64,000 nt of DNA from Vitrella brassicaformis CCMP3155 (Eukaryota; Protista; Chromerida): positions 124,001 to 188,000 of the forward strand of contig CDMY01000677.1 of NCBI GenBank assembly GCA_001179505.1, read 5' to 3'. The notes under the pieces were generated by a model. The model ran no database searches. It had not been told where the DNA came from and was given only the letters and a program-made list of their open reading frames with translations. Position numbers and translations under genes: made by a program. Every line of letters begins with the position of its first letter. The first letter of the stretch is position 1. Shown here piece by piece: positions 8,729 through 19,880 of the stretch.

Positions 8729-11700
8729 TCACTCGAGCACCCGGACTGGCGTGAATTTGATGGTGCCATTCTTCTCACCCACGAGGTTGATGTTGGCCTG
8801 CGTGGCCGCCTGCCGCAGTGCTCTCACTGGCCCCCACCGCTGCTTGGGCTTGTGCACGTAGCTGATGCACTGCAGGCTGGCGAACTGGTCGAACATCTGG
8901 CGGCTGGTCTGCAGGAGCTCCGTGTACAGCTGCCGGGCGTGCTCCTCGGTCTGGTTGTAGGACACCTTGATCTCTATGGCCCGCACGCGGTTGTCGATGA
9001 CCTCGCGGACGTCGTCACCCACGCCCATGTCCATGTCGCCCACGCCGGCCCCCTCGTACACCCCCCACCGAACGGGGAGGCTCGGGGGGTCGTGCATCAC
9101 CCCCCAGGCGTTGGACACACGCTCGATCTCGACCTCCGTGGCGACCGTGATGCGCCGGCCTTGCTGTGGGGCCAGGTGGCGGATGGCCTTGGGCAGCACG
9201 GCAATCGGCACGATCTGGTCCTCGTCGCTTTCGTCGCTGTCGACAGCCATGGTCATCTTGACGGCCAGCCTGTCCAGGCTCGGCAGCTCCTTGACGAAGC
9301 TGTGCAGGCCGCCTTCGTAGGTCCGGTCGCTGTTCATGGTGCCCTGGTCGATGTCGAAGGTGCGCACGGCCGGCAGCATCGCGGGAATGCGCGACACCAG
9401 CTGGTTGGGCAGGTGTGTGTAGGGGAAGTAGCTCGTCGGCAAGACCTTCACCGTGAGGGTCTCAGCACAGGAGAACACGGCCGTGTTGAGCTCGTACGCC
9501 ATCGTCACGTCGTTGGGCATCTTGAACGGAGACAGCGACACCTGATGGATTGAAGGAGGGAGGGATGCACCAGCAGAGCGACAAGCGCGTCTGCACGGGG
9601 TGTGTGGTGTGTGTTGGTCTCAGTGTTCTATAGATCGCCCACCCACCTTTGCCGCCATGTTGGCAAGTTTCTGGACTGTCGAGTGTGTGCCCGCCAGCTG
9701 GACGGGCGAACCGACCAGGGGCAGACCGACAGCCAGCTCCTCACATCGAAACTCGTCGGGCCGCCCGTTGTCCACGCGCCGCACCTCAGCATGGTACACC
9801 TCGACGGCATCGGGCTCCAAACACTGACTACGGAAGCCATGCAGCCTCTGCAGATTGGTTGATAAGAAACACAACACAGACAGACACAGAGAGGATGGCC
9901 ACGGCACGGCTGAGGCGGGTCGTTGCTCTAGCACACAAACACACACACACCTGAATGAAGCTTGTGTGTGCGATTGGGGTTCGGTCGTTGTCGTGGGGCA
10001 TCTCCATCTCGATCGTGGTGAGCCGGGACTGCAGGATGGCCCAGAAGTGCTGCTCGCCATGGAATATCACTGAGGTACACACACACACAGAGACAGACAC
10101 GGGGATGGGCACATGGGTGGATGGATGGGTGGACACACACATGCGTATGATACCATGGCCAGTGAGCGACCGAAGGGTGCCGGCTGTGGGCGTGTGTCGC
10201 ATGACGTTGCCAATGCGCTCCAGCGACTTGGGGAAGGTGTGACCGCCGCGGCCACGATCGAACAGCATGTGGATCGAGTGCAGCCCACCCATTGCCGCGG
10301 GCACCCACTGCTGCAGGGCATTCTCGGATCTGCACGTGAGCTCTCGCAGCAGGGGGAACCGGTAGCGCCGGAAATGCGGGATGCGCTGCCAGGTGCTGTC
10401 CACCTTGACGGCGTGGAGGTGCTCGAAGATGATCGGCTCGTCGGGCTGGGGGAGCTGGTTGAGGGCGGTCTCGGCCTGTCGCTCCTGACGGTCGGTGAGG
10501 AGGGGCGAAGTCAGCGTCATCGACTGCACACACACACACACACACAGACAGAGAGAAAGAAGATAAGGACGACGTATGTCTGTCTGTCTGTCTGTTTTCC
10601 TGGCAGTGCAGTGCAGTGCATCTCACGTACCTGCAGGCTGGTGGTAGTGGCCTCGAGCAGTATCAGCTTGGGCATTGCCGGAGGACCGTGGATTTTCATG
10701 GTCGTCGTGCGCGAAAGAGAACCTGGCCAAGGCAAACACACAACCAACCGCACCACCCGCCCTCTTGCCGCTTCCCCCCACATCATAAGCGAGACAGACC
10801 TACTTATCCATCGCTGAGCCACGGCAATGCTCGGAGCGGTCTCAAACTCGACGATGGGGTGCATGGCTGGGTTCTTGGCCATGGATCTGAACGCACAGCT
10901 GACGGCCGAGAGGGACCGCACAACGTCCACAAACCCGATGTACCCGCCCACGCCGATGCGGTCGCCGTCACTCAGCCACAACGCTTCGGCTATCGAATCC
11001 AAAGACAGACGCTGCAATGCGCACAATCCACACACCCCCGTGCGCAGGCATGTGTGTCGTTCATCTGCGTGTGTGATGTCTGTCTGGCGTACGTCCTCTT
11101 CATTGAGGGCCTGCATCTTCTGCTGTATCATGTCGAGCTTCTGGGTGGCCCGCTCGATAGACAGCTGGGACCGGGCGCTGTTGGTCTGCATCATCTCCCG
11201 CCACACACGGAAGTGACGCCTAATCGCCTGCAGTGCAGAACGACAGACAACAAGAGCAGAACAAGGGCAGGCAGCACACAAACTTGGATGGATTTGGTGC
11301 GCCGTTTGTGTGCGCACCTGGACTTTGGTCTGGGTGTTGGTGTTTGCGACCTCGTGCGGCATCAAACTCTTGGCCATCAAAATCTCCACAGCCTGTTTGT
11401 GTTGCAGACAGACATAGATAGACGAACCCAACACAACAACCATCCGACATACATCATCGGCCCGCCCGCTGTCCCTGTGTCTGCCTGATTGTCCCTACAG
11501 CTGCCTGCCTGCGCACCTTTGCCTTGGTCTGCTCAATCATGAGTAGCTGCTTCCGGAGAGACGACGCCATGCTCTCCATCGCCAGCAGAACCTCCTCGTC
11601 CTCATCCATCTGAGCCAACTGCAGGCAGGCAGGCAACACACACAAGAGAGCGCATGGACGGATGCCTCAGCCCGACTGAGAGCCCGTGTGCCTCGAGGCA

Positions 11701-11878
11701 GCCATACGTCATCGTTGAGTCTCTGTCGCTTGGAGCTCTCATCACTCCCGCCTCCCGCAGCTGCCGCAGATGATGATGATGCAGCGGCAGCGGCAGCAGC
11801 TGCCGCAGGCGCCGCTCCACTCGAGGCCGCAGCACTAGACTGGGCGAGGGAGCGCTTCTGCCGCCCTCCTCTGTCCAT
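8729..11878 (-). CDS. Lineage-specific hypothetical protein: low-complexity Ala/Ser N-terminus, coiled coil, F-box-like segment, long C-terminal exon
   Basis: About 8 exons with GT-AG borders. F-box-like YIGFVDVVRSLSAVSCAFRSMA. Terminal exon 8729-9543 is open for about 270 codons. Confidence 0.75.
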
Positions 11879-12045
11879 TTTCGCTACTTCCTATAGCTAC
11901 TTCCTTTCAAAAAGGCGGCACCGCGCATCAAGAGGCTTGCGAGCTTAGTATAGTAGCCAAAAGTGCGAGCTGGAGTCAGGGCCTGCCAATCCCCGTGCCA
12001 ATCTCAGCATTGGCAGCTCTCCGGTATCCAGTGCGGGCGGAGGGC

Positions 12046-13818
12046 ATGGCTTCTGCAGAGATGGATGACGACACTGAGTCTCTGAGTGAGACCGTTCCAG
12101 ACTGTCTGGAGTGTTCGATATGCTTCGGGCTGCTTTACAAGCCCACAGCCCTTGATTGCGGGTGGGTGAGTTGCTTCCCTGGGTCGATGATACATGACTG
12201 ACACCCATGATGTGATGCCATTGCTCTCTGTCGGTTTGGTTGTTTGTTGGTTGCTGACTGACAGGCACGTCTTCTGTTTCTGGTGCTTGTTCCGGTCGAT
12301 GGCGCAATGGCATGCTTCCAAGTGGTGAGAGGGAGGAAGACCACCACTGCAGTCATTGCAAGATGGTGAGGGTGCATCGGGAGTGTTCCGCTGTCGCTGT
12401 CGTGATGCCTGCAGCCCGCTTTGCAAGAGGAGCTTCAGTGTGTTCCCCCGGGTGTGTCGGCCCCTCTACATGTACATCAGGAGCAAATACCCTCGCACCT
12501 TCGACCAGAGAAGGCAAGGTAAGGTACCTACCGACGCTGGCTGGTCAATTCACTGACCAGAGAGAGCACCTTCCAGATTCACACACACACACAATGCACT
12601 CACTCATGGATGCCTTGCCTTTCCTCATCTCATCTCGCTTGGCAGAAGTGGAGGAGTTTGAGCGGGCCACAGAGCGGCAGTCGCCCGCAGAGGAGCACAT
12701 CCTCACCCCCGGCTCTGGGGCCAACGTCGACCGACTCCCCCCAACAGCCAGCCGAGAGATCAGAGACCTCCTCTCCGCATGGCAAGGCAATGACGCGCCT
12801 CAACCGCCATTACCGCCCTCGCCCTCGCGACCCGCTGCTGCTTCTGGCGCCGAGCCGATGGCAGAGAGTGGGGGTGGGCAGCAAGGTGAGGATGGAGCTG
12901 CTGGGGAGGGGGATGAGGCGTTTGTGCACGTGAGCGATGAGGTGTCGTCGCTGCTGTCCCCTGAGATGCGGCCCACGGCTGTGAGGCTGCCGGTCAGAGA
13001 ATTCGTCCACTTCCAAGTGTGTGATGGCACTCACGCGCACACCCAGCCAGCCAGCCAGGAACTGATCTGGATGGGCGTCTGTGTGTTGTGTGTTGTGTAT
13101 GTGTAGGTGGGATGTGACGGCTGTGGTCGGCTGCCTATCGTGGGGGCTCGTTATAGATGTCGTGACTGCCATGAGAGGGTGGGTTACGACCTGTGCGGCG
13201 CGTGTCACCGGGAAAACTACAGTCGATGCGGGCTGTTCAACCAGATGCACACGTGAGCTGTCCAGATGGACATTTATGTGCGTGTTCGGGCGCGGGGGTG
13301 TGTGACTTGTATGTCTGTCAGTCTGTCTGTCTGTCTGGATGTCTGTCTGGATGTCTGTCTCTGTTTTACTCGCTGCATGTGGTGCATGCAGGTCAGCGCA
13401 TAGGATGGAGCTGGTGCAGCCCGACGCCGTCACAGTGCTGCTCAACTGCCTCCACAAATGCCACCCCACACTCCCTCTGTAAGGAAGGAAAGGCACACAG
13501 ACAAACACACCAGCCACACAGACATACATGTACTCTCTGTCTCCCTTCCCTGTCCCTGTCTGCATCCGTCCATGTGGTCGGTGTGTCAGGGCCGAGCTGC
13601 TGTCCCTGCTGGAACTGCAGGGATCCAGCGGGCCCTCCACCCCAGACAATGACAGTGACAATGACCTGGAGGATGAGACCCCCGAGCGGACCGGTCCCCT
13701 CCCACCACTGGGCCTCATGCCTGACGAGCAGTCCCCTCCTGTGGGTGATGACGAGACTGGCGACCGCCCAGCACCAGCTGGCGGGAGGGAAGAGGGGAGG
13801 GGAGGGAGCTCTGCTTGA
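12046..13818 (+). CDS. PRT1: PRT1-like E3 ubiquitin ligase / N-recognin (RING-HC + ZZ zinc finger)
   Basis: Exons 12046-12161, 12265-12324, 12415-12518, 12646-13016, 13107-13252, 13392-about 13478, about 13590-13818. RING: CSICFGLLYKPTALDCGHVFCFWCLFRSMAQWHASKCPLCKRSFSVFPRVC. ZZ: VHFQVGCDGCGRLPIVGARYRCRDCHERVGYDLCGACH...FNQMHTSAHRMEL. Both match recalled plant PRT1 motifs. Confidence 0.82.
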
Positions 13819-14575
13819 TTGACCGAAAGCGACTGACGGGACGGTGGCCCATGCTGCCTGCCCCCGTTCTGTTCTGCTGTGCTGTGCTGGGCCCTCAGCC
13901 ATCGGATGGCCCGCGCGAAGATGAGGCTTGATGGCACAGGGGTGGGTTGGGGCGGGTGGGGTGCCTTTGGTTACTGGCAGGCATGTCAGTATGTGACTGA
14001 CTGACAGGTATGCATGGTGGATGGATCCTATCCTGCTCTGATCGGTCGATCGATTGATTGAAGTTCGGTTCGTGCTTGTCCCGATGCATTGCAGGCACTC
14101 ATGTACACACAGGACACATCGTCTCTCGCATTCACCCACCAGCCCGCCAGTGAGTGCAGTGCGTCCAGGTCATTCATTCACGCATCCCAGTGCGGGGTCA
14201 GTCTGTGGGGTCAGCATGTCGGTCTGTCAGTGCGGGGTTAGTCTTTGGGGTCAGTCAGTCCCCACACCGACAGACCTACATCCTGACCCCAAGAACACAC
14301 CCCACATAGACAGGCAGACCCCATAAAGACAGACACCAAATCGTTTTCCCCCCCATTCAGTCAGTCCTTAACAAACAGCACCATGTACACGAAACGACAC
14401 GACACGACACACACGCTGTACACACGCTGTACAGACAGCCAATCAGACAGACAGGGTTCGCCTCCTTCTGCCGCCGCGCATCGGCCACCCAGCGAACGAA
14501 TCCCTTCCTTCCTTCCCCCCTGCCTTGCCTTGACCACCCTCTCATCGGGCAGTCAGTCAGCCACATCACATCACC

Positions 14576-15502: not shown

Positions 15503-15983
15503 TAGACGGACGATCTACTGATCTGTGAGACAGGACGGCTGTTGAGTCTTTCGTTGTTGTCCGTTCCAGACAGTCCAGGACGTCAGACAGGATGACATCG
15601 TTCTTTGTGTGTACGCAAGGCAAGTGGCTGTTCCGTTAACTACCGAGTCATGAATTCGCACGCACCCATCCATCGCGTCACCACCGGACTTCCTCCTGTC
15701 TACGTCTACCGTGCCATCGCACCTGCCGAGCGACAGGATGGCGGCCAGCTGCGGAAAAGCGACACGATCCTGGCTTGACTTGGCTCCACACACTCCATCC
15801 ATCCATCCACCCACCCACCCATTGGACACTCATTGGCTGCCCTCTAAAAGTACTGACTGTCGAATGTGCGTTGCGTATGTCACTGGCTGTACGGCCTCTA
15901 CTGCTATCACACAGACAACTCAGCCGGCCGCGAGACCAAGACCGGTGCACACACACACCCGGAGCGTTGGGTAGGTAGCTCTA

Positions 15984-18900
15984 CTACCGAGGCCCCCGCC
16001 CCCTTCTGCCTCCCCTTGCCCGCCCTCCGTGGCCATATCCATGGCCGAACCCCCTCTTGCCCACGCCGTACCCGCCCCTGCCGTCCTGGTAGTACTCGCC
16101 AAAGTAACTGTCATCCTCGTCGTGCTCCATGAAACTGTAGGCACGGCCTCGCCCGCCCCCCCTGCCCCTGCCGCTACGCCCACCCCTTCCTCCTCCCGAC
16201 GAGAACTGGTTGAAGGCCTGCTGCATCCTCGCCGCCGTCGGGGAGGCGTCTGTGTGCTGCTGATATGTGTCGTATCTGTCGTCTTGCTGCTGCTGGTGTT
16301 GGGAGAAGGGCATCGGGTGTTCATGGTCGGCAGCGGGAGCGGACGTCGCGTGTGGGATGTGTGGAAACGGCAGTCGTGGCGGCCGCGATGATGGGGGAGG
16401 GTGGGGGGGTGGAAGGATCTGAGGGACAGACGACCACCGCTGGTCGTCCATCTGCGGCGTGCCGGCTTCATCCTGCCGCTGCTTCCTCTGCCTTCGCCGT
16501 CTGCTCTGCGGTGTTGCCACGTTCCGCTCACCCGCCCCCGCCCCCGGGACAGTGAGACGATGTCCCGCTCCTGCCGTGTTTGGCTGTCCTCTGCCGTGTA
16601 GCTGGATAGCCCCATAGGCCGACGGATGGACCGCCCCAGCCCCTGGGGGCGGGGGTGGCCGGCCGAAGCCTCCCGGTCCCGGATGGCCACCGTGGTGGTG
16701 TGTGTGGTGGTGGTGGGTCGGTCTGTATGGGTTGTCGGTATTGCGGAGGAGGGCCTTGATCTGGTTGTCGTCTTGCTTGCGGTAGCGGCGGAAGAGCTCG
16801 TCCAGCGGCTGGCGAGTCGACAGCAGGAAGGCCGCACGACGCAGCTCCATCGACACGCGCTCCTGGGCCGCGAAAGACAGACCTGTGGACAGGCAATGAA
16901 GGAATGGCACACAGCACAGCAATCGTCACGGACGCCACGTGGATGTGAGTGTCTGTGTTCTTTTGATGACTCACACACCGAGGGTGCGATCCTTCTCCAA
17001 AGGGTCCTCGATGGCCATGCAGATGCGCTGGAATATGTGATCCAGCGCCCGTCCGCCCTCGACCTCCTCCTCTGGTTCCCCCTCCGCCTCTCCCTCTCCC
17101 TCCCCCGTCGGCTCTTCAGCCGCCTCCTCCTCACCGATTGCCGCATCCCCCTCAATGGCAGCAGCAGCTGCCTGGTCGGTATCGGCGTCGGCCTCGCACT
17201 CCGTCTCCTCTCGCGCCTCGGTCTCCTCCTCCTGGTAGTCGTCGTAGGGCCGGTCGTCGGCCGATGTCTCGTCGTTGGATGGGGACGGCAGGGCGGCGTC
17301 GGTGGAGGGCTCCTCGGACTCATCTGCTGCAGACAGGGGGGCCTCACTCGACACAGGGGCCTCGTTGGCGGCGGGCTCGGTCGGCTGCATTTGGAGAGAA
17401 AAACAGACATATGCAGACAGACACATGAATGACATGGGGGGCATACATGCTCGCTCGCTTACCGTGGTCTCAGCCGCCGTGACGCTGTCGCTCGCGCTGG
17501 CGGCGCTGGTGGCGCTGGTGGTCCGCGCAGGTGCGCCGCTGGAGAAGTAGTCCCTCTTGGTCAGGTGTTGTGCTACCCCCGCCGGCCGCTTGATGGATAC
17601 CACATCGCGGTAGTAGTTGAACATATAGGCGAAATATACGGTAAACTCGTAGAAGAGCGACAGCAGACTGTCACCCGCTACCCCAGACCCTCTTGCAGGT
17701 GGGGCGTCGCTCGGGTTCTGCTGCTGCCCCTGCCCCTGGCCCCCGCCCATGCCGAGCATGGAGAGCAGGTCGTTGACACCTCTGCTCTGACTGCCCCCCC
17801 GCTCCCGCACCAGCACGTTGTTCTCCCTCTCCATGCGCCGCAGCGGCTCGCACGGGTCGGCCAGCAGCCGATGGGCGAGGGATCCCGGCGCAGGGAAGTC
17901 GGTATAGTCGGCTTCGGTTGTGGGGAAGATGGGCGTGTTGACGCCGTCTGTGGGGTGGACGTAGAAGACATCGTTGTTCTGCGGGGGGTCGACCAGCACG
18001 GAGGGGTAGGGCGGGGGACACACGTGGGCCGGGGGGCTCTGCAGATTGGGCAGCACGGGCTGCCCGGTGGTCAGCTGACGGTGGTGCTGCAGGAAATGGC
18101 TGAGTGAGTGACAAAGGGAGGGAAAAGAGGACGGACAAGTGACAAACAAAGAGATTCGGCGAGATGTGGTGCGGTGCAGCAGGCTGACAGACATGGTGAG
18201 GAGGATCCATGAGTATGAAGAGAAGGCCCCTCGTCTGGGGTCGACAAGGCCCCGGCACTTGGCCCAGTGCTTCACGACAAGACCCAGCGCAGCCGCACGG
18301 CTGTCATGCTCGGCATACGCCCTGCAGGTTACCGAACAAACAAACGATCACACACACACACATACACACACACAGAGGCAGGGATCCCTGGATATATCGG
18401 TGTTTTTTCCGTCCATGCGGACGGACGGACGTACCTGAGGAGTCTTGAGTTGTGCAGGACGACTTCATGGTTGAAGGATATGTCGATGGTCAGCTCAGGG
18501 TGATCGTACTCATCATAGGCACGCCCGTCGGCGTCGGTCTTGCGCCGGATGGCCGTGCACTTGACGATCGGCACCCGGGCGTTCTCGATGCACTCTATCT
18601 GAAACACCGACTGGTCCAGCGCACGGGACAGCACACGGACGGCCTGACACAACCAACAGCCACACACACATCTCATCTGTGTTCGCTGTGGTCTCTCCTG
18701 TCTGTCCTCCTCAGCATTCCCTCACCCACCTGGATGGTCGGTGCGTGAGGCAGCTTGAGCCACTGCCAGTTGTCGTGTTTGTCGCTAGGGAACGAGTCGG
18801 CCGCCCGCAGAGGGTTCTCGTCCTTGGCGCCACTGGCCGCCTCTGCGCGGGCCTCATCCATCAGTCGACTGAGCCTGGAGGGCGGCAGCTGCACCACCAC

Positions 18901-19880
18901 ATCAAGGTCGCTCTCCCTGGTGGCGAAGCCGTTCACTGCGCTGCCGTACAGCAAGCCGGGATGGCCGAAAGTGGAGGTCGTCACGTCCACAACTGATGAA
19001 TGAAGACCAAGGAGAATAAATGCGTGGAGGTCTGATTTTGTGGCATGCGCGTGCAAGGCTGACTTACTGTTTTGGAATAGCCGGATCCATGTGTGTATCT
19101 GGTGTTTGTCGGGCCTGAGGCGGTCGACTCTGTCCCACAGCTGCGCATCGTGCGGGTCGGGGGCGTGCGCGTCCACTACTGGCGACGGCGGGATGAACAC
19201 ACTCGTGTTGCGGTTGAAGAAGTACTCAACCTGACACCACCCACCACCGACAGATGGATGGATGGATGGATGGATGGATGCCTCGTGAGATCTGTCCTCC
19301 CATGCACCCACCTGTTCAAGCCGCGTTCTGCAGGAGTATCCGAGCCGTCCTCTCTTAACCAGATCTCTCACGGCCGCGAGGAAGGTCCGCTGCTGCTGCC
19401 GTCCCCCGACGCTCTCCTGCACCAGCATGTAGTCCACCAGCCGCGTGCAGGCGATCCTCTGCTCATAGGTGGAGAACACCGCGGGCATGTGAGGCACCGC
19501 AACGGCTTGAAGTGTCTACACACAGACACACACAGAGAGAGAGTCGAGATCTGACCAGATCTTCAAACGCACTCCGTCCGTCTCATGTGGGGTGCTTGTG
19601 AGCTCACCGCGAGGACGCACTCAGCCACGGCATCGCAGTACGCCGAGAGGAAAGCCGCCCTCTGCTGCGACAGCTCATCAGCCAATCTGGTGAGATGGTG
19701 GTAGTGGAGATCCTTGAGGTTGGTGGTGCTCCAGATGGAGTTGCGGAGGCGGTGCGCCACGTCCACATGCGGGTGCCCGTCCACAGCTGACGTGAAGCCG
19801 CTGATGAGATCATCCGTAAGGCGTGAGCTGTCGTATTCGGTGAGAGGGGAGCGAGGCGGGATGGGATTGTTGAACTCCAT
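15984..19880 (-). CDS. Terminal nucleotidyltransferase (Cid1/TUT4-7/URT1-like TUTase or non-canonical poly(A) polymerase) with a C-terminal RGG-rich disordered tail
   Basis: LYGSAVNGFATRESDLDVVV (GS...DxD), ARVPIVK, IDISFNHEVVLHNSRLL, VKHWAKCRGL, FSSYSWILL, PVLPNLQ, PAP-associated MAIEDPLEKDRTLG; tail GGRGGRSGRGRGGGRGR...GGRARGGRRGRGPR. Confidence 0.9.

What the first reader, a model, noticed from the sequence alone, without database searches (positions are those of the whole stretch)
12046..13818. Plant PRT1-type N-degron recognin (RING + ZZ) in an apparently non-plant protist genome
Seen: the spliced product has RING C..C..LLYKP..L.CGH..CFWC...SM......CP.C......FP.VC..LY and ZZ VHF..GCD.CG..PI.G.RYRC.DC.E..GYDLC..C.......FNQ.HT..HR.EL. 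Established (from recall of Arabidopsis PRT1): these inter-cysteine residues are characteristic of PRT1, the E3 for aromatic N-terminal residues, generally described as green-lineage specific and having two RINGs plus ZZ. Here only one RING is evident; the second is replaced by a low-complexity linker. Inference: either PRT1 is older or wider than assumed, or it arrived by endosymbiotic or horizontal transfer, implying an aromatic N-degron branch in this lineage.
Basis: partly seen in the sequence, partly recalled or inferred. Interest (0 to 1): 0.7.

Follow-up and report, generated by a model that had tools for sequence, protein, structure and literature searches.

The report
Plant-type PRT1 ubiquitin ligase in Vitrella
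This alga, a relative of the malaria and Toxoplasma parasites, makes a one-RING version of PRT1, an enzyme that marks proteins for destruction by reading an aromatic first amino acid, and close copies in Toxoplasma, Eimeria and several unrelated protists show that PRT1 is not plant-only as the literature says.

Summary
Window 12046-13818 (+) holds a seven-exon gene of Vitrella brassicaformis. Spliced transcript contigs from four public runs support all six GT..AG introns. The gene is single-copy.

The 365-370 aa product has these parts:
- one C3HC4 RING followed by two helices;
- a roughly 110-residue low-complexity linker with no RING2 relic;
- a ZZ finger;
- a C-terminal helical hairpin.

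The ZZ matches Arabidopsis PRT1 ZZ without gaps (56% identity, E 2.6e-19; the next ZZ scores 1e-5). It keeps both Asp that bind the alpha-amino group, the key Phe352, the HxxxH zinc site and identical L2/L3 loop lengths. Its model fits degron-bound PRT1 at 1.2-1.5 A.

Among 1.84 billion proteins, the best non-self hits are named plant PRT1 (3e-50). Orthologues occur in Toxoplasma, Neospora, Eimeria and Eleutheroschizon, all with one RING, and they form a clade with Vitrella. Members also appear in green algae and in transcriptomes of Stenamoeba, Rigifila, Diphylleia and Gefionella.

So PRT1 is not plant-specific. Whether it is ancient or was transferred is unresolved, and aromatic N-degron binding is inferred, not tested. 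I class it as a new variant of a known kind.

The parts
11969..12045 (+). 5' UTR. Transcript contigs begin at 11969-11977, and there is no ATG before 12046.
12046..12161 (+). Exon 1 coding part. The first ATG is at 12046; the public model starts at the ATG at 12061. It carries RING Cys1, Cys2 and Cys3.
12265..12324 (+). Exon 2, carrying the RING His and Cys5-6 (the HVFCFWC motif).
12415..12518 (+). Exon 3, carrying RING Cys7-8 (CPLC), the linchpin Lys58 and the first post-RING helix.
12646..13016 (+). Exon 4. It holds the second post-RING helix, the low-complexity Pro/Ala/Gly/Glu linker, and the first four ZZ residues (VHFQ).
13107..13252 (+). Exon 5, the ZZ core. It holds the Zn1 C4 site, both Asp, the L2 and L3 loops, Phe256 and the first His.
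13392..13478 (+). Exon 6, holding the second His of HxxxH, the last ZZ strand and the first C-terminal helix.
13590..13818 (+). Exon 7, holding the second C-terminal helix, an acidic/Pro-rich tail and the TGA stop codon at 13816-13818. The 3' UTR runs on to at least 13943.
12112..12424 (+). C3HC4 RING domain, split by introns 1 and 2. In P0001 numbering the zinc ligands are C18, C21, C33, H35, C38, C41, C54 and C57. Canonical E2-contact positions are Ile20, Trp40, Pro55 and Lys58.
12455..12671 (+). Two helices after the RING (residues 68-78 and 80-97). They carry the family motif FPxVCxxL...P...R, the region that forms the RING dimer interface in Arabidopsis PRT1.
   Evidence: PMC12370974
12672..13004 (+). 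Low-complexity linker (residues 98-208), predicted to be disordered, in the place where plant PRT1 has RING2. It has no Cys/His pattern.
13005..13416 (+). PRT1-type ZZ finger (residues 209-269), split by introns 4 and 5. Key residues are D216, L221, V237, D240, F256, H260 and H264.
13426..13623 (+). C-terminal helical hairpin (residues 273-284 and 290-301). Its motif LLxxLxxxxPxL...L is shared with apicomplexan, green-algal, Stenamoeba, Rigifila and Gefionella members, but not with land-plant PRT1.

Best explanation
The gene encodes a member of the PRT1 (PROTEOLYSIS1) family of single-subunit RING E3 ubiquitin ligases, in a one-RING form shared by Vitrella and coccidian apicomplexans.

Shown here:
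- The gene is transcribed, spliced and single-copy.
- The product has a complete C3HC4 RING with helical tail, a long low-complexity linker, and a ZZ finger that is PRT1-type in sequence, loop lengths, zinc ligands and predicted fold.
- It also has a C-terminal helical hairpin.
- The nearest relatives are named plant PRT1 and apicomplexan orthologues.

Inferred mechanism, from the Arabidopsis structures (PMC12370974):
- The ZZ finger holds the free alpha-amino group of a substrate's first residue with Asp216 and Asp240.
- It buries a bulky aromatic side chain (Phe, Tyr or Trp) under Phe256 on the long L3 loop, helped by Val237 (L2) and Leu221 (L1).
- The flexible linker lets the RING bring an E2~ubiquitin to lysines of the bound substrate, which is then degraded.
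- Substrates would be proteins whose aromatic N-terminus is exposed by endoproteolytic cleavage.
- Because RING2 is missing, RING activation probably relies on the RING alone or on pairing between molecules through the conserved post-RING helices. That step is speculative.
For: Gene and expression:
- The gene model and expression are supported.
- The gene is single-copy.

Domains and match to PRT1:
- RING and ZZ pass Pfam cut-offs.
- The PDB sequence search puts Arabidopsis PRT1 ZZ (8zg8/8zg9/8zga/8zgb) first at E 2.6e-19, 73 bits, 61 ungapped residues and 34/61 identical. The next ZZ, HERC2, has E 1e-5.

Residue mapping onto PMC12370974:
- Conserved: D312 = D216, D336 = D240, F352 = F256, HxxxH = H260..H264 and G310 = G214.
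- Changed: I333 to V237, Y317 to L221.
- L2 is 6 residues and L3 is 14, as in Arabidopsis.
- Across 111 family ZZ fingers both Asp are 100% conserved and Phe is 98% conserved.
- The Y317 position varies even in named plant PRT1: Cys in Solanum and Striga, Leu in Selaginella.

Structure:
- The AF2 model of ZZ plus C-terminus has pLDDT 89.5.
- It fits degron-bound PRT1 ZZ at rmsd 1.2-1.5 A (TM 0.85-0.88), against 3.7 A for HERC2.
- The RING model has pLDDT 90.1, with two helices after the RING.
- It resembles active RING E3s such as RNF168, RNF8, TRIM25 and TRAF6.

Database searches:
- The exhaustive search of 1.84 billion representatives gave 78 hits at E <= 1e-30.
- The best non-self hit is Solanum tuberosum 'E3 ubiquitin-protein ligase PRT1' at 3.1e-50.
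- The three nearest ESM Atlas clusters are streptophyte PRT1.

Phylogeny:
- Vitrella groups with Eleutheroschizon, Eimeria, Toxoplasma and Neospora (UFBoot 90, SH-aLRT 83). It is sister to the apicomplexans (100/97), as in the species tree.
Against: - RING2 is absent. In Arabidopsis it forms an intramolecular dimer with RING1 and is needed for robust activity.
- Three pocket-adjacent positions differ from Arabidopsis: Y317 to L, I333 to V and G308 to Q. The nearly invariant Arg before Phe352 is Leu here. Specificity or affinity may therefore differ.
- No binding, E3 activity or substrate has been measured for any non-plant member.
- The homodimer idea got no support from the one complex prediction, which counts neither for nor against.
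Confidence: 0.68

Rival explanations
1. It is a PRT1-family ligase whose ZZ pocket has shifted specificity. It would still read free N-termini, but with a different or broader set of first residues than Phe/Tyr/Trp, for example also Leu/Ile or a different third-position preference.
For: Leu replaces Tyr317 and Val replaces Ile333. In Arabidopsis these residues shape the hydrophobic network and the preference at substrate position 3. Y317A or I333A alone abolishes binding of YKA but not YKF. Gln replaces Gly308 and Leu replaces the near-invariant Arg351.
Against: Phe352, the primary determinant, and both Asp are kept, and loop lengths are identical. The Tyr317 position is already Cys or Leu in named plant PRT1. 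The model fits the degron-bound conformation.
Confidence: 0.2
2. It is not an N-recognin. On this reading it is a RING-ZZ ligase whose ZZ binds another ligand (a histone or SUMO tail, as in HERC2, ZZZ3 and p300). Alternatively, it is a weak or inactive E3 because RING2 is gone.
For: ZZ fingers in general bind diverse N-terminal tails (one search lists HERC2, ZZZ3, p62 and KCMF1 as the next structural neighbours). Disrupting the RING1-RING2 dimer lowers Arabidopsis PRT1 discharge activity ten-fold.
Against: The PRT1 ZZ match has a margin of about 45 bits over the next ZZ finger. The PRT1-only long L3 loop with its Phe is present. RING1 is the RING essential for activity in Arabidopsis, and here it keeps all zinc ligands and the usual E2-contact residues. 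The one-RING form is conserved from Vitrella to Toxoplasma and is expressed.
Confidence: 0.08
3. This rival concerns origin only, not function. The ancestor of chromerids and apicomplexans acquired the gene from a green alga, by endosymbiotic or horizontal transfer, rather than inheriting it from an early eukaryote.
For: In both trees the alveolate clade sits in an unresolved cluster with chlorophyte sequences. Its highest pairwise identity (49%) is to an unlabelled sequence (P0066) that groups next to chlorophyte sequences. The C-terminal hairpin is shared with chlorophytes but not land plants.
Against: The same hairpin and ZZ type occur in Stenamoeba (Amoebozoa), Rigifila (CRuMs) and Gefionella (malawimonad), lineages without plastids. 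A tree holding all labelled green sequences apart from all non-green ones is not rejected (AU p = 0.36). No supported branch nests the alveolates inside a named green subgroup.
Confidence: 0.3

Closest known systems
Arabidopsis thaliana PRT1 (PROTEOLYSIS1), the N-recognin E3 for aromatic N-termini; ZZ structures 8zg8, 8zg9, 8zga, 8zgb
   Same: The RING1 type has the same FPxVCxxL helical tail. The ZZ has the same zinc ligands (C4 plus C2-HxxxH), the same L2/L3 loop lengths, both alpha-amino-binding Asp and the key Phe352. ZZ identity is 56% without gaps, and the predicted fold lies within 1.2-1.5 A. Domain order is RING, disordered linker, ZZ.
   Different: It has no RING2. Tyr317 is Leu, Ile333 is Val and Gly308 is Gln. 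It carries an added conserved C-terminal helical hairpin that land-plant PRT1 lacks. The host is an alveolate, not a plant.
Toxoplasma gondii, Neospora caninum and Eimeria stiedai 'zinc finger, ZZ type protein' or hypothetical proteins, and the Eleutheroschizon duboscqi transcript (all uncharacterised)
   Same: They are direct orthologues with one RING, a long linker, a PRT1-type ZZ and the same C-terminal hairpin. They form a clade with Vitrella. The Toxoplasma ZZ also hits Arabidopsis PRT1 ZZ best (E 2e-14).
   Different: They are longer (428-533 aa), with an N-terminal extension and a longer linker. L2 is one residue longer in the Toxoplasma, Neospora and unnamed coccidian (P0002) copies that were measured. 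None is annotated as PRT1.
p62/SQSTM1 and KCMF1 ZZ fingers (N-degron readers of animals); BIG/UBR4 ZZ
   Same: The ZZ fold uses two Asp to hold a free N-terminus, feeding substrates into degradation.
   Different: These ZZ fingers score far lower against the Vitrella ZZ (E 1e-4 or worse, rmsd 2-5 A). The PRT1 structure paper describes p62 as having an HxxH zinc site, a short L3 and a shallow acidic pocket that prefers basic residues.
ClpS and the ClpS-homology domain of UBR1/UBR2
   Same: They are functional analogues: recognition of bulky hydrophobic (type-2) N-terminal residues.
   Different: The fold is unrelated. Vitrella also has a separate ClpS-type gene and a UBR-box gene elsewhere in the genome.
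LONRF and BFAR RING proteins
   Same: They have the nearest RING sequences outside the family.
   Different: They have no ZZ. The Vitrella protein has no LON substrate-binding or SAM domain.

Membership tests
PRT1 (PROTEOLYSIS1) N-recognin E3 ligases | N-terminal canonical C3HC4 RING (RING1) with the family's conserved helical tail | tested here: met
   Pfam RING at residues 17-57. The 80-sequence family alignment has near-invariant C18, C21, K27, P28, C33, G34, H35, C38, F39, W40, C41, C54, P55, C57, P65, C68, L71 and P80, all present here. The model has pLDDT 90 with helices at 68-78 and 80-97.
PRT1 (PROTEOLYSIS1) N-recognin E3 ligases | A second, non-canonical RING2 that pairs with RING1 within one chain | tested here: not met
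   phmmer with the RING query and regular expressions find one RING only. The stretch from the last RING cysteine to the ZZ finger (residues 58-208) has one Cys. All five apicomplexan orthologues also have one RING. No RING2-type gene was found elsewhere in the genome with the Stenamoeba RING2 as query, which is an inconclusive blank.
PRT1 (PROTEOLYSIS1) N-recognin E3 ligases | ZZ finger with an HxxxH second zinc site and the long L2 and exceptionally long L3 loops | tested here: met
   Ungapped 61-residue alignment to 8zg8. L2 is 6 residues, L3 is 14, and the motif is H260-x3-H264. The definition of the feature comes from PMC12370974.
PRT1 (PROTEOLYSIS1) N-recognin E3 ligases | Two Asp that bind the alpha-amino group (D312, D336) and Phe352, the primary determinant for aromatic N-termini | tested here: met
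   D216, D240 and F256 are aligned to them. Across 111 family ZZ fingers the Asp are 100% conserved and the Phe 98%.
PRT1 (PROTEOLYSIS1) N-recognin E3 ligases | Supporting hydrophobic residues Tyr317 and Ile333 | tested here: inconclusive
   Here they are Leu221 and Val237. Both are hydrophobic. The 317 position is Cys or Leu in named plant PRT1, so the change is within family range, but its effect on binding is unknown.
PRT1 (PROTEOLYSIS1) N-recognin E3 ligases | Reciprocal best similarity to named PRT1 rather than to other RING-ZZ proteins | tested here: met
   Best non-self hit of 1.84 billion representatives is Solanum PRT1 at 3.1e-50; Striga PRT1 and Selaginella PRT1-like are also named among the top hits. 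The Atlas top three clusters are PRT1. PDB top four are PRT1 ZZ.
PRT1 (PROTEOLYSIS1) N-recognin E3 ligases | Binds Phe/Tyr/Trp N-termini and ubiquitylates such substrates | not testable with these tools
   Needs ITC or pull-down and in vitro ubiquitylation. Only the predicted fit to the degron-bound conformation is available.
Other ZZ readers (p62/SQSTM1, HERC2, ZZZ3, p300/CBP) | Closer ZZ similarity to these readers than to PRT1 ZZ | tested here: not met
   E-values are 1e-5 or weaker against these ZZ fingers, versus 2.6e-19 for PRT1. Their rmsd is 1.8-3.7 A, against 1.2-1.5 A for degron-bound PRT1. The Vitrella ZZ also has the long PRT1-length L3 carrying Phe, which the structure paper reports as unique to PRT1.
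LONRF-type RING ligases | LON substrate-binding domain next to the RING | tested here: not met
   No PF02190 hit in P0001. LONRF proteins appear only as weak RING-only hits.

The most novel reading that the evidence does not exclude
PRT1 is not a plant invention but an old eukaryotic N-recognin, possibly as old as the last common eukaryotic ancestor. It would have been lost in animals and fungi and kept in green plants, chromerids, coccidian apicomplexans, Amoebozoa, CRuMs and malawimonads. The original protein would have carried the C-terminal helical hairpin. The tandem RING would be dispensable, since the one-RING form works as an aromatic N-degron ligase in Toxoplasma and its relatives. 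That would give these parasites a degradation branch their animal hosts lack.
Probability: 0.35. Interest if true: 0.78.

Novelty: new variant of a known kind. Interest (0 to 1): 0.62.

Why it matters
[quoted passage not shown] It is being promoted as a plant-only handle for targeted protein degradation. I found no paper in the held library that links PRT1 to apicomplexans or other protists.

Three consequences follow from the finding.
- The family's range and age need revising.
- A natural one-RING form tests the claim that the tandem RING is needed for activity.
- Toxoplasma and Eimeria have a candidate aromatic N-degron ligase that their animal hosts lack. Toxoplasma is genetically tractable, so the pathway's role after proteolytic processing can be tested directly.

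Tried and rejected
- Exon-by-exon Pfam scans found only the ZZ in exon 5. The RING is split over three exons, one of only 19 aa, and is invisible that way.
Full-length work used the public protein record P0001, which a by-reference search of exon 4 returned.
- The word-index search with P0001 found only 5 relatives. With a 20-sequence alignment it was swamped by low-complexity candidates and added only two fungal LON-RING proteins. It gave no extra taxon names.
- Complex prediction on two copies of residues 1-105 returned 'no answer' (score 0.02, controls not run). This is neither for nor against RING homodimerisation.
- The genome search with the Stenamoeba RING2 as query found nothing, which is an inconclusive blank.
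- The Pfam ATE_C search of the genome found nothing, which does not show absence in an intron-rich genome.
- Contamination of the assembly by a green alga is rejected, for four reasons. The contig is 300 kb. The gene has introns of the same style as its neighbours. Its transcripts are in runs that hold this genome. It groups with apicomplexans.
- A processed pseudogene is rejected. Only the intron-containing locus exists in the assembly.
- Folding the six introns showed no structure beyond shuffles, except a marginal result for intron 5 (z = -2.2).
Full report
**The sequence and the gene model**

Window 12046-13818 on the + strand carries a seven-exon gene. The exons are 12046-12161, 12265-12324, 12415-12518, 12646-13016, 13107-13252, 13392-13478 and 13590-13818. 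All six introns are GT..AG.

I laid contigs of four public runs, from at least three studies, on 11900-14000. In each run one contig skips every intron exactly at these borders, without a single differing letter. The transcript runs from about 11969 to beyond 13943. The genome assembly holds only this intron-containing copy, so the spliced contigs come from RNA and not from a processed copy.

A by-reference search of exon 4 returned the public record of the product, P0001. It is 365 aa, labelled 'unnamed protein product [Vitrella brassicaformis CCMP3155]', and lies on a 300-kb contig. P0001 equals the exon translations. It begins at the second ATG (12061), whereas the transcript's first ATG is 12046, which would give 370 aa.

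Vitrella is an alveolate in the Colpodellida, not a green-lineage organism. The assembly has 72.7 Mb in 1064 contigs.

**Anatomy of the protein (P0001 numbering)**

- **RING.** A C3HC4 RING with zinc ligands C18, C21, C33, H35, C38, C41, C54 and C57 (Pfam E 9e-9). It carries the residues that RING ligases generally use to hold and activate E2~ubiquitin. From established knowledge of RING E3s, these are Ile20, Trp40, Pro55 and a basic residue after the last Cys (Lys58).
- **Post-RING helices.** An AF2 model built on 80 family sequences has pLDDT 90.1. It shows two helices after the RING, at 68-78 and 80-97. Its nearest solved folds are active RING ligases with flanking helices: RNF168, RNF8, TRIM25 and TRAF6.
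- **Linker.** Residues 98-208 are a Pro/Ala/Gly/Glu-rich linker. Only one Cys lies anywhere between the last RING cysteine and the ZZ finger, so there is no RING2 relic.
- **ZZ finger.** Residues 209-269 (Pfam E 6e-8).
- **C-terminal hairpin and tail.** An AF2 model of residues 196-305, built on 75 sequences with pLDDT 89.5, adds two confident helices at 273-284 and 290-301. An acidic, Pro-rich tail follows.

**Is the ZZ PRT1-type?**

Yes, by every test I could run.

Against all PDB chains, the four best matches are the Arabidopsis PRT1 ZZ entries 8zg8, 8zg9, 8zga and 8zgb. They score E 2.6e-19 and 73 bits over 61 residues, without a gap and with 34 identities. The next ZZ, HERC2, scores E 1e-5.

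The paper that solved those structures (PMC12370974) names the features that set the PRT1 ZZ apart:

| Arabidopsis PRT1 feature | Role | In Vitrella |
|---|---|---|
| Asp312, Asp336 | hold the alpha-amino group | Asp216, Asp240 (kept) |
| Phe352 on the long L3 loop | primary determinant for Phe/Tyr/Trp | Phe256 (kept) |
| Ile333 | supporting hydrophobic residue | Val237 |
| Tyr317 | supporting hydrophobic residue | Leu221 |
| Gly308 | backbone contact | Gln212 |
| Gly310 | backbone contact | Gly214 (kept) |
| HxxxH | second zinc site | H260..H264 (kept) |
| L2 and L3 loop lengths | longer than in any other solved ZZ | 6 and 14 residues, as in Arabidopsis |

In 111 family ZZ fingers taken from the search hits, both Asp are invariant and Phe is kept in 109. 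L2 is 6 residues in 103 and L3 is 14 in 74. The Tyr317 position varies even in named plant PRT1: Cys in Solanum and Striga, Leu in Selaginella.

The model superposes on the degron-bound PRT1 ZZ at 1.2-1.5 A (TM 0.85-0.88). That is better than on the apo form (2.2 A) and far better than on HERC2 (3.7 A). Those entries were released in 2025, after the predictor's training.

**Reciprocal searches**

An exhaustive HMMER scan of 1.84 billion representatives gave 393 hits at E <= 1e-10 and 78 at E <= 1e-30. The best non-self hit is 'E3 ubiquitin-protein ligase PRT1 [Solanum tuberosum]' at 3.1e-50, with 40% identity over the matched stretches. Striga PRT1, Selaginella PRT1-like and Psilotum follow. 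The three nearest ESM Atlas clusters are streptophyte PRT1 (score 0.93-0.94).

LON-RING and BFAR proteins appear only as distant RING-only neighbours.

**Who else has it**

Named hits fall into these groups:
- **Land plants and Chara.**
- **Green algae:** Apatococcus, Auxenochlorella (annotated PRT1/CGL103), Volvox, Myrmecia, Pedinophyceae, Picochlorum and a Chloropicon cluster.
- **Apicomplexans, from genome assemblies:** Toxoplasma gondii, Neospora caninum and Eimeria stiedai.
- **Apicomplexan, from a transcriptome:** Eleutheroschizon duboscqi. Its accession prefix GHVT01 was identified through PMC10304595.
- **Plastid-less protists, from EukProt transcriptomes only:** Stenamoeba stenopodia (Amoebozoa), Rigifila ramosa and Diphylleia rotans (CRuMs), and Gefionella okellyi (a malawimonad).

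The ZZ fingers of the Toxoplasma, Stenamoeba and Gefionella proteins also hit Arabidopsis PRT1 ZZ first, at E 2e-14, 2e-19 and 9e-17, about 20-40 bits ahead of any other ZZ.

These are lower bounds. Only 150 hits were listed and about 30 clusters could be named. I cannot say whether Chromera, Plasmodium, Cryptosporidium, dinoflagellates, red algae or stramenopiles have the gene. The four plastid-less protists rest on transcriptomes, so culture or prey contamination is possible, most of all for the alga-eating Diphylleia. However, the Gefionella and Rigifila ZZ fingers carry substitutions not seen in the green sequences I looked at.

**Architecture across the family**

- Land plants, Chara, Stenamoeba and some algae have two RINGs.
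- All six alveolate sequences, and several chlorophytes, have one RING.
- The C-terminal hairpin motif is shared by Vitrella, the apicomplexans, chlorophytes, Stenamoeba, Rigifila and Gefionella. It is not recognisable in land-plant PRT1.

**Trees**

I built trees on RING1 plus ZZ plus hairpin, about 175-180 columns. One was a quick tree of 90 rows and one a careful tree of 47 rows.
- Vitrella joins the apicomplexans (SH-aLRT 92 in the quick tree; UFBoot 90 and SH-aLRT 83 in the careful tree; 88% of bootstrap trees).
- Vitrella is sister to a well-supported apicomplexan group (100/97), as in the species tree.
- Land plants form their own clade.
- All deeper branches are open.
- A tree that holds all labelled green sequences on one side, and alveolates, Amoebozoa, CRuMs and the malawimonad on the other, is not rejected (AU p = 0.36).

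So the gene has been inherited vertically at least since the common ancestor of chromerids and apicomplexans. Whether it goes back to early eukaryotes or came from a green alga is unresolved.

**How it most likely works**

The shown features are listed under anatomy above. The mechanism is inferred from the Arabidopsis work:
- The ZZ captures a substrate whose first residue is Phe, Tyr or Trp. Typically this is a neo-N-terminus made by a protease.
- Asp216 and Asp240 bind the amino group, and the L3 loop closes Phe256 over the aromatic ring.
- The long flexible linker lets the RING-bound E2~ubiquitin reach lysines in the substrate.

In Arabidopsis, RING1 is the essential RING, and RING2 stabilises it through a leucine interface on the post-RING helices. 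Here that partner is missing. The conserved helices 68-97 could pair between molecules, but the single complex prediction gave no answer, so this step is speculation. The changes at the Tyr317, Ile333 and Gly308 positions may alter affinity or the preference at substrate position 3.

**Context in the genome**

Vitrella also has a UBR-box gene and a separate ClpS-type gene on other contigs. I found no arginyl-transferase (ATE_C) match, which is a weak negative. The neighbours of the gene look unrelated. One is a head-to-head gene of unknown family whose transcript contig ends about 20 bp from this gene's start. The other is a Cid1-type nucleotidyltransferase gene downstream on the other strand.

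**Comparison with the literature and verdict**

PRT1 is described as follows:
- 'plant-specific' (PMC11668491);
- one that 'appears to be unique to plants' (bioRxiv 10.1101/2025.11.27.690864, dated 2026);

The tandem RING is called a unique and essential feature (PMC12370974). Four full-text searches found no paper linking PRT1 to apicomplexans or other protists. The hits that co-mention Toxoplasma concern unrelated degron tools. Databases label the Toxoplasma protein only 'zinc finger, ZZ type protein'.

The finding is therefore real and its interpretation holds. I class it as a new variant of a known kind: a PRT1-family ligase lacking RING2, carrying a C-terminal hairpin, in a lineage outside plants. 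Function is inferred, not shown.

Noticed in passing
window 11454-11968 (minus strand) and 11900-11977: A divergently oriented gene of unknown family starts at ATG 11878 on the minus strand, with an Ala/Ser-rich N-terminus. A transcript contig ends at 11950, about 20 bp from the 5' end of the PRT1-like transcript (11969-11977). The two genes therefore appear to share a very short bidirectional promoter.
   Followed up: partly
window 15923-19497 (minus strand): ORF pieces with weak matches to Cid1-family poly(A) polymerase/nucleotidyltransferase domains (PAP_assoc, NTP_transf_2, MTPAP-like). This is probably a terminal uridylyl/adenylyl transferase gene downstream of the PRT1-like gene.
   Followed up: partly
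window 13017-13106, 13253-13391 and 12519-12645 (introns 4, 5 and 3): Intron 4 is 90 nt, in frame, ends in its own stop codon, and has an AC-rich 5' half and a GT-rich 3' half. Intron 5 holds a (TGTC)n run at 13300-13364, and intron 3 an (AC)n run. Folded as RNA, only intron 5 is marginally more stable than shuffles (z = -2.2, 4 of 200). The others are not, so there is no clear support here for structure-assisted splicing.
   Followed up: partly
G000:C285:68077-68235 (L002) and G000:C290:64752-64913 (L003): The genome has one detectable UBR-box exon and, on another contig, a ClpS-type domain in a 283-aa open frame. No ATE_C (arginyl-transferase) match was found in six-frame search. The make-up of the other N-degron branches in Vitrella is unexplored.
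   Followed up: partly
P0001 residues 273-301 = window 13426-13623, and the equivalent region of P0003, P0028, P0030, P0067, P0072, P0085 and P0087: A confidently predicted two-helix hairpin after the ZZ, with a shared motif (LLHxLxxxNPxLSxxxIxxL). It is conserved in protist and green-algal PRT1-like proteins but missing from land-plant PRT1. Its role is unknown and I found no description of it.
   Followed up: partly
P0058 cluster (28 members, ENA and Logan marine assemblies), P0089, P0102, P0055, P0111, P0106, P0134: Several well-populated metagenomic or transcriptomic clusters of PRT1-like proteins could not be assigned to any organism. Some have two RINGs. They may extend the family to further eukaryotic groups.
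   Followed up: no
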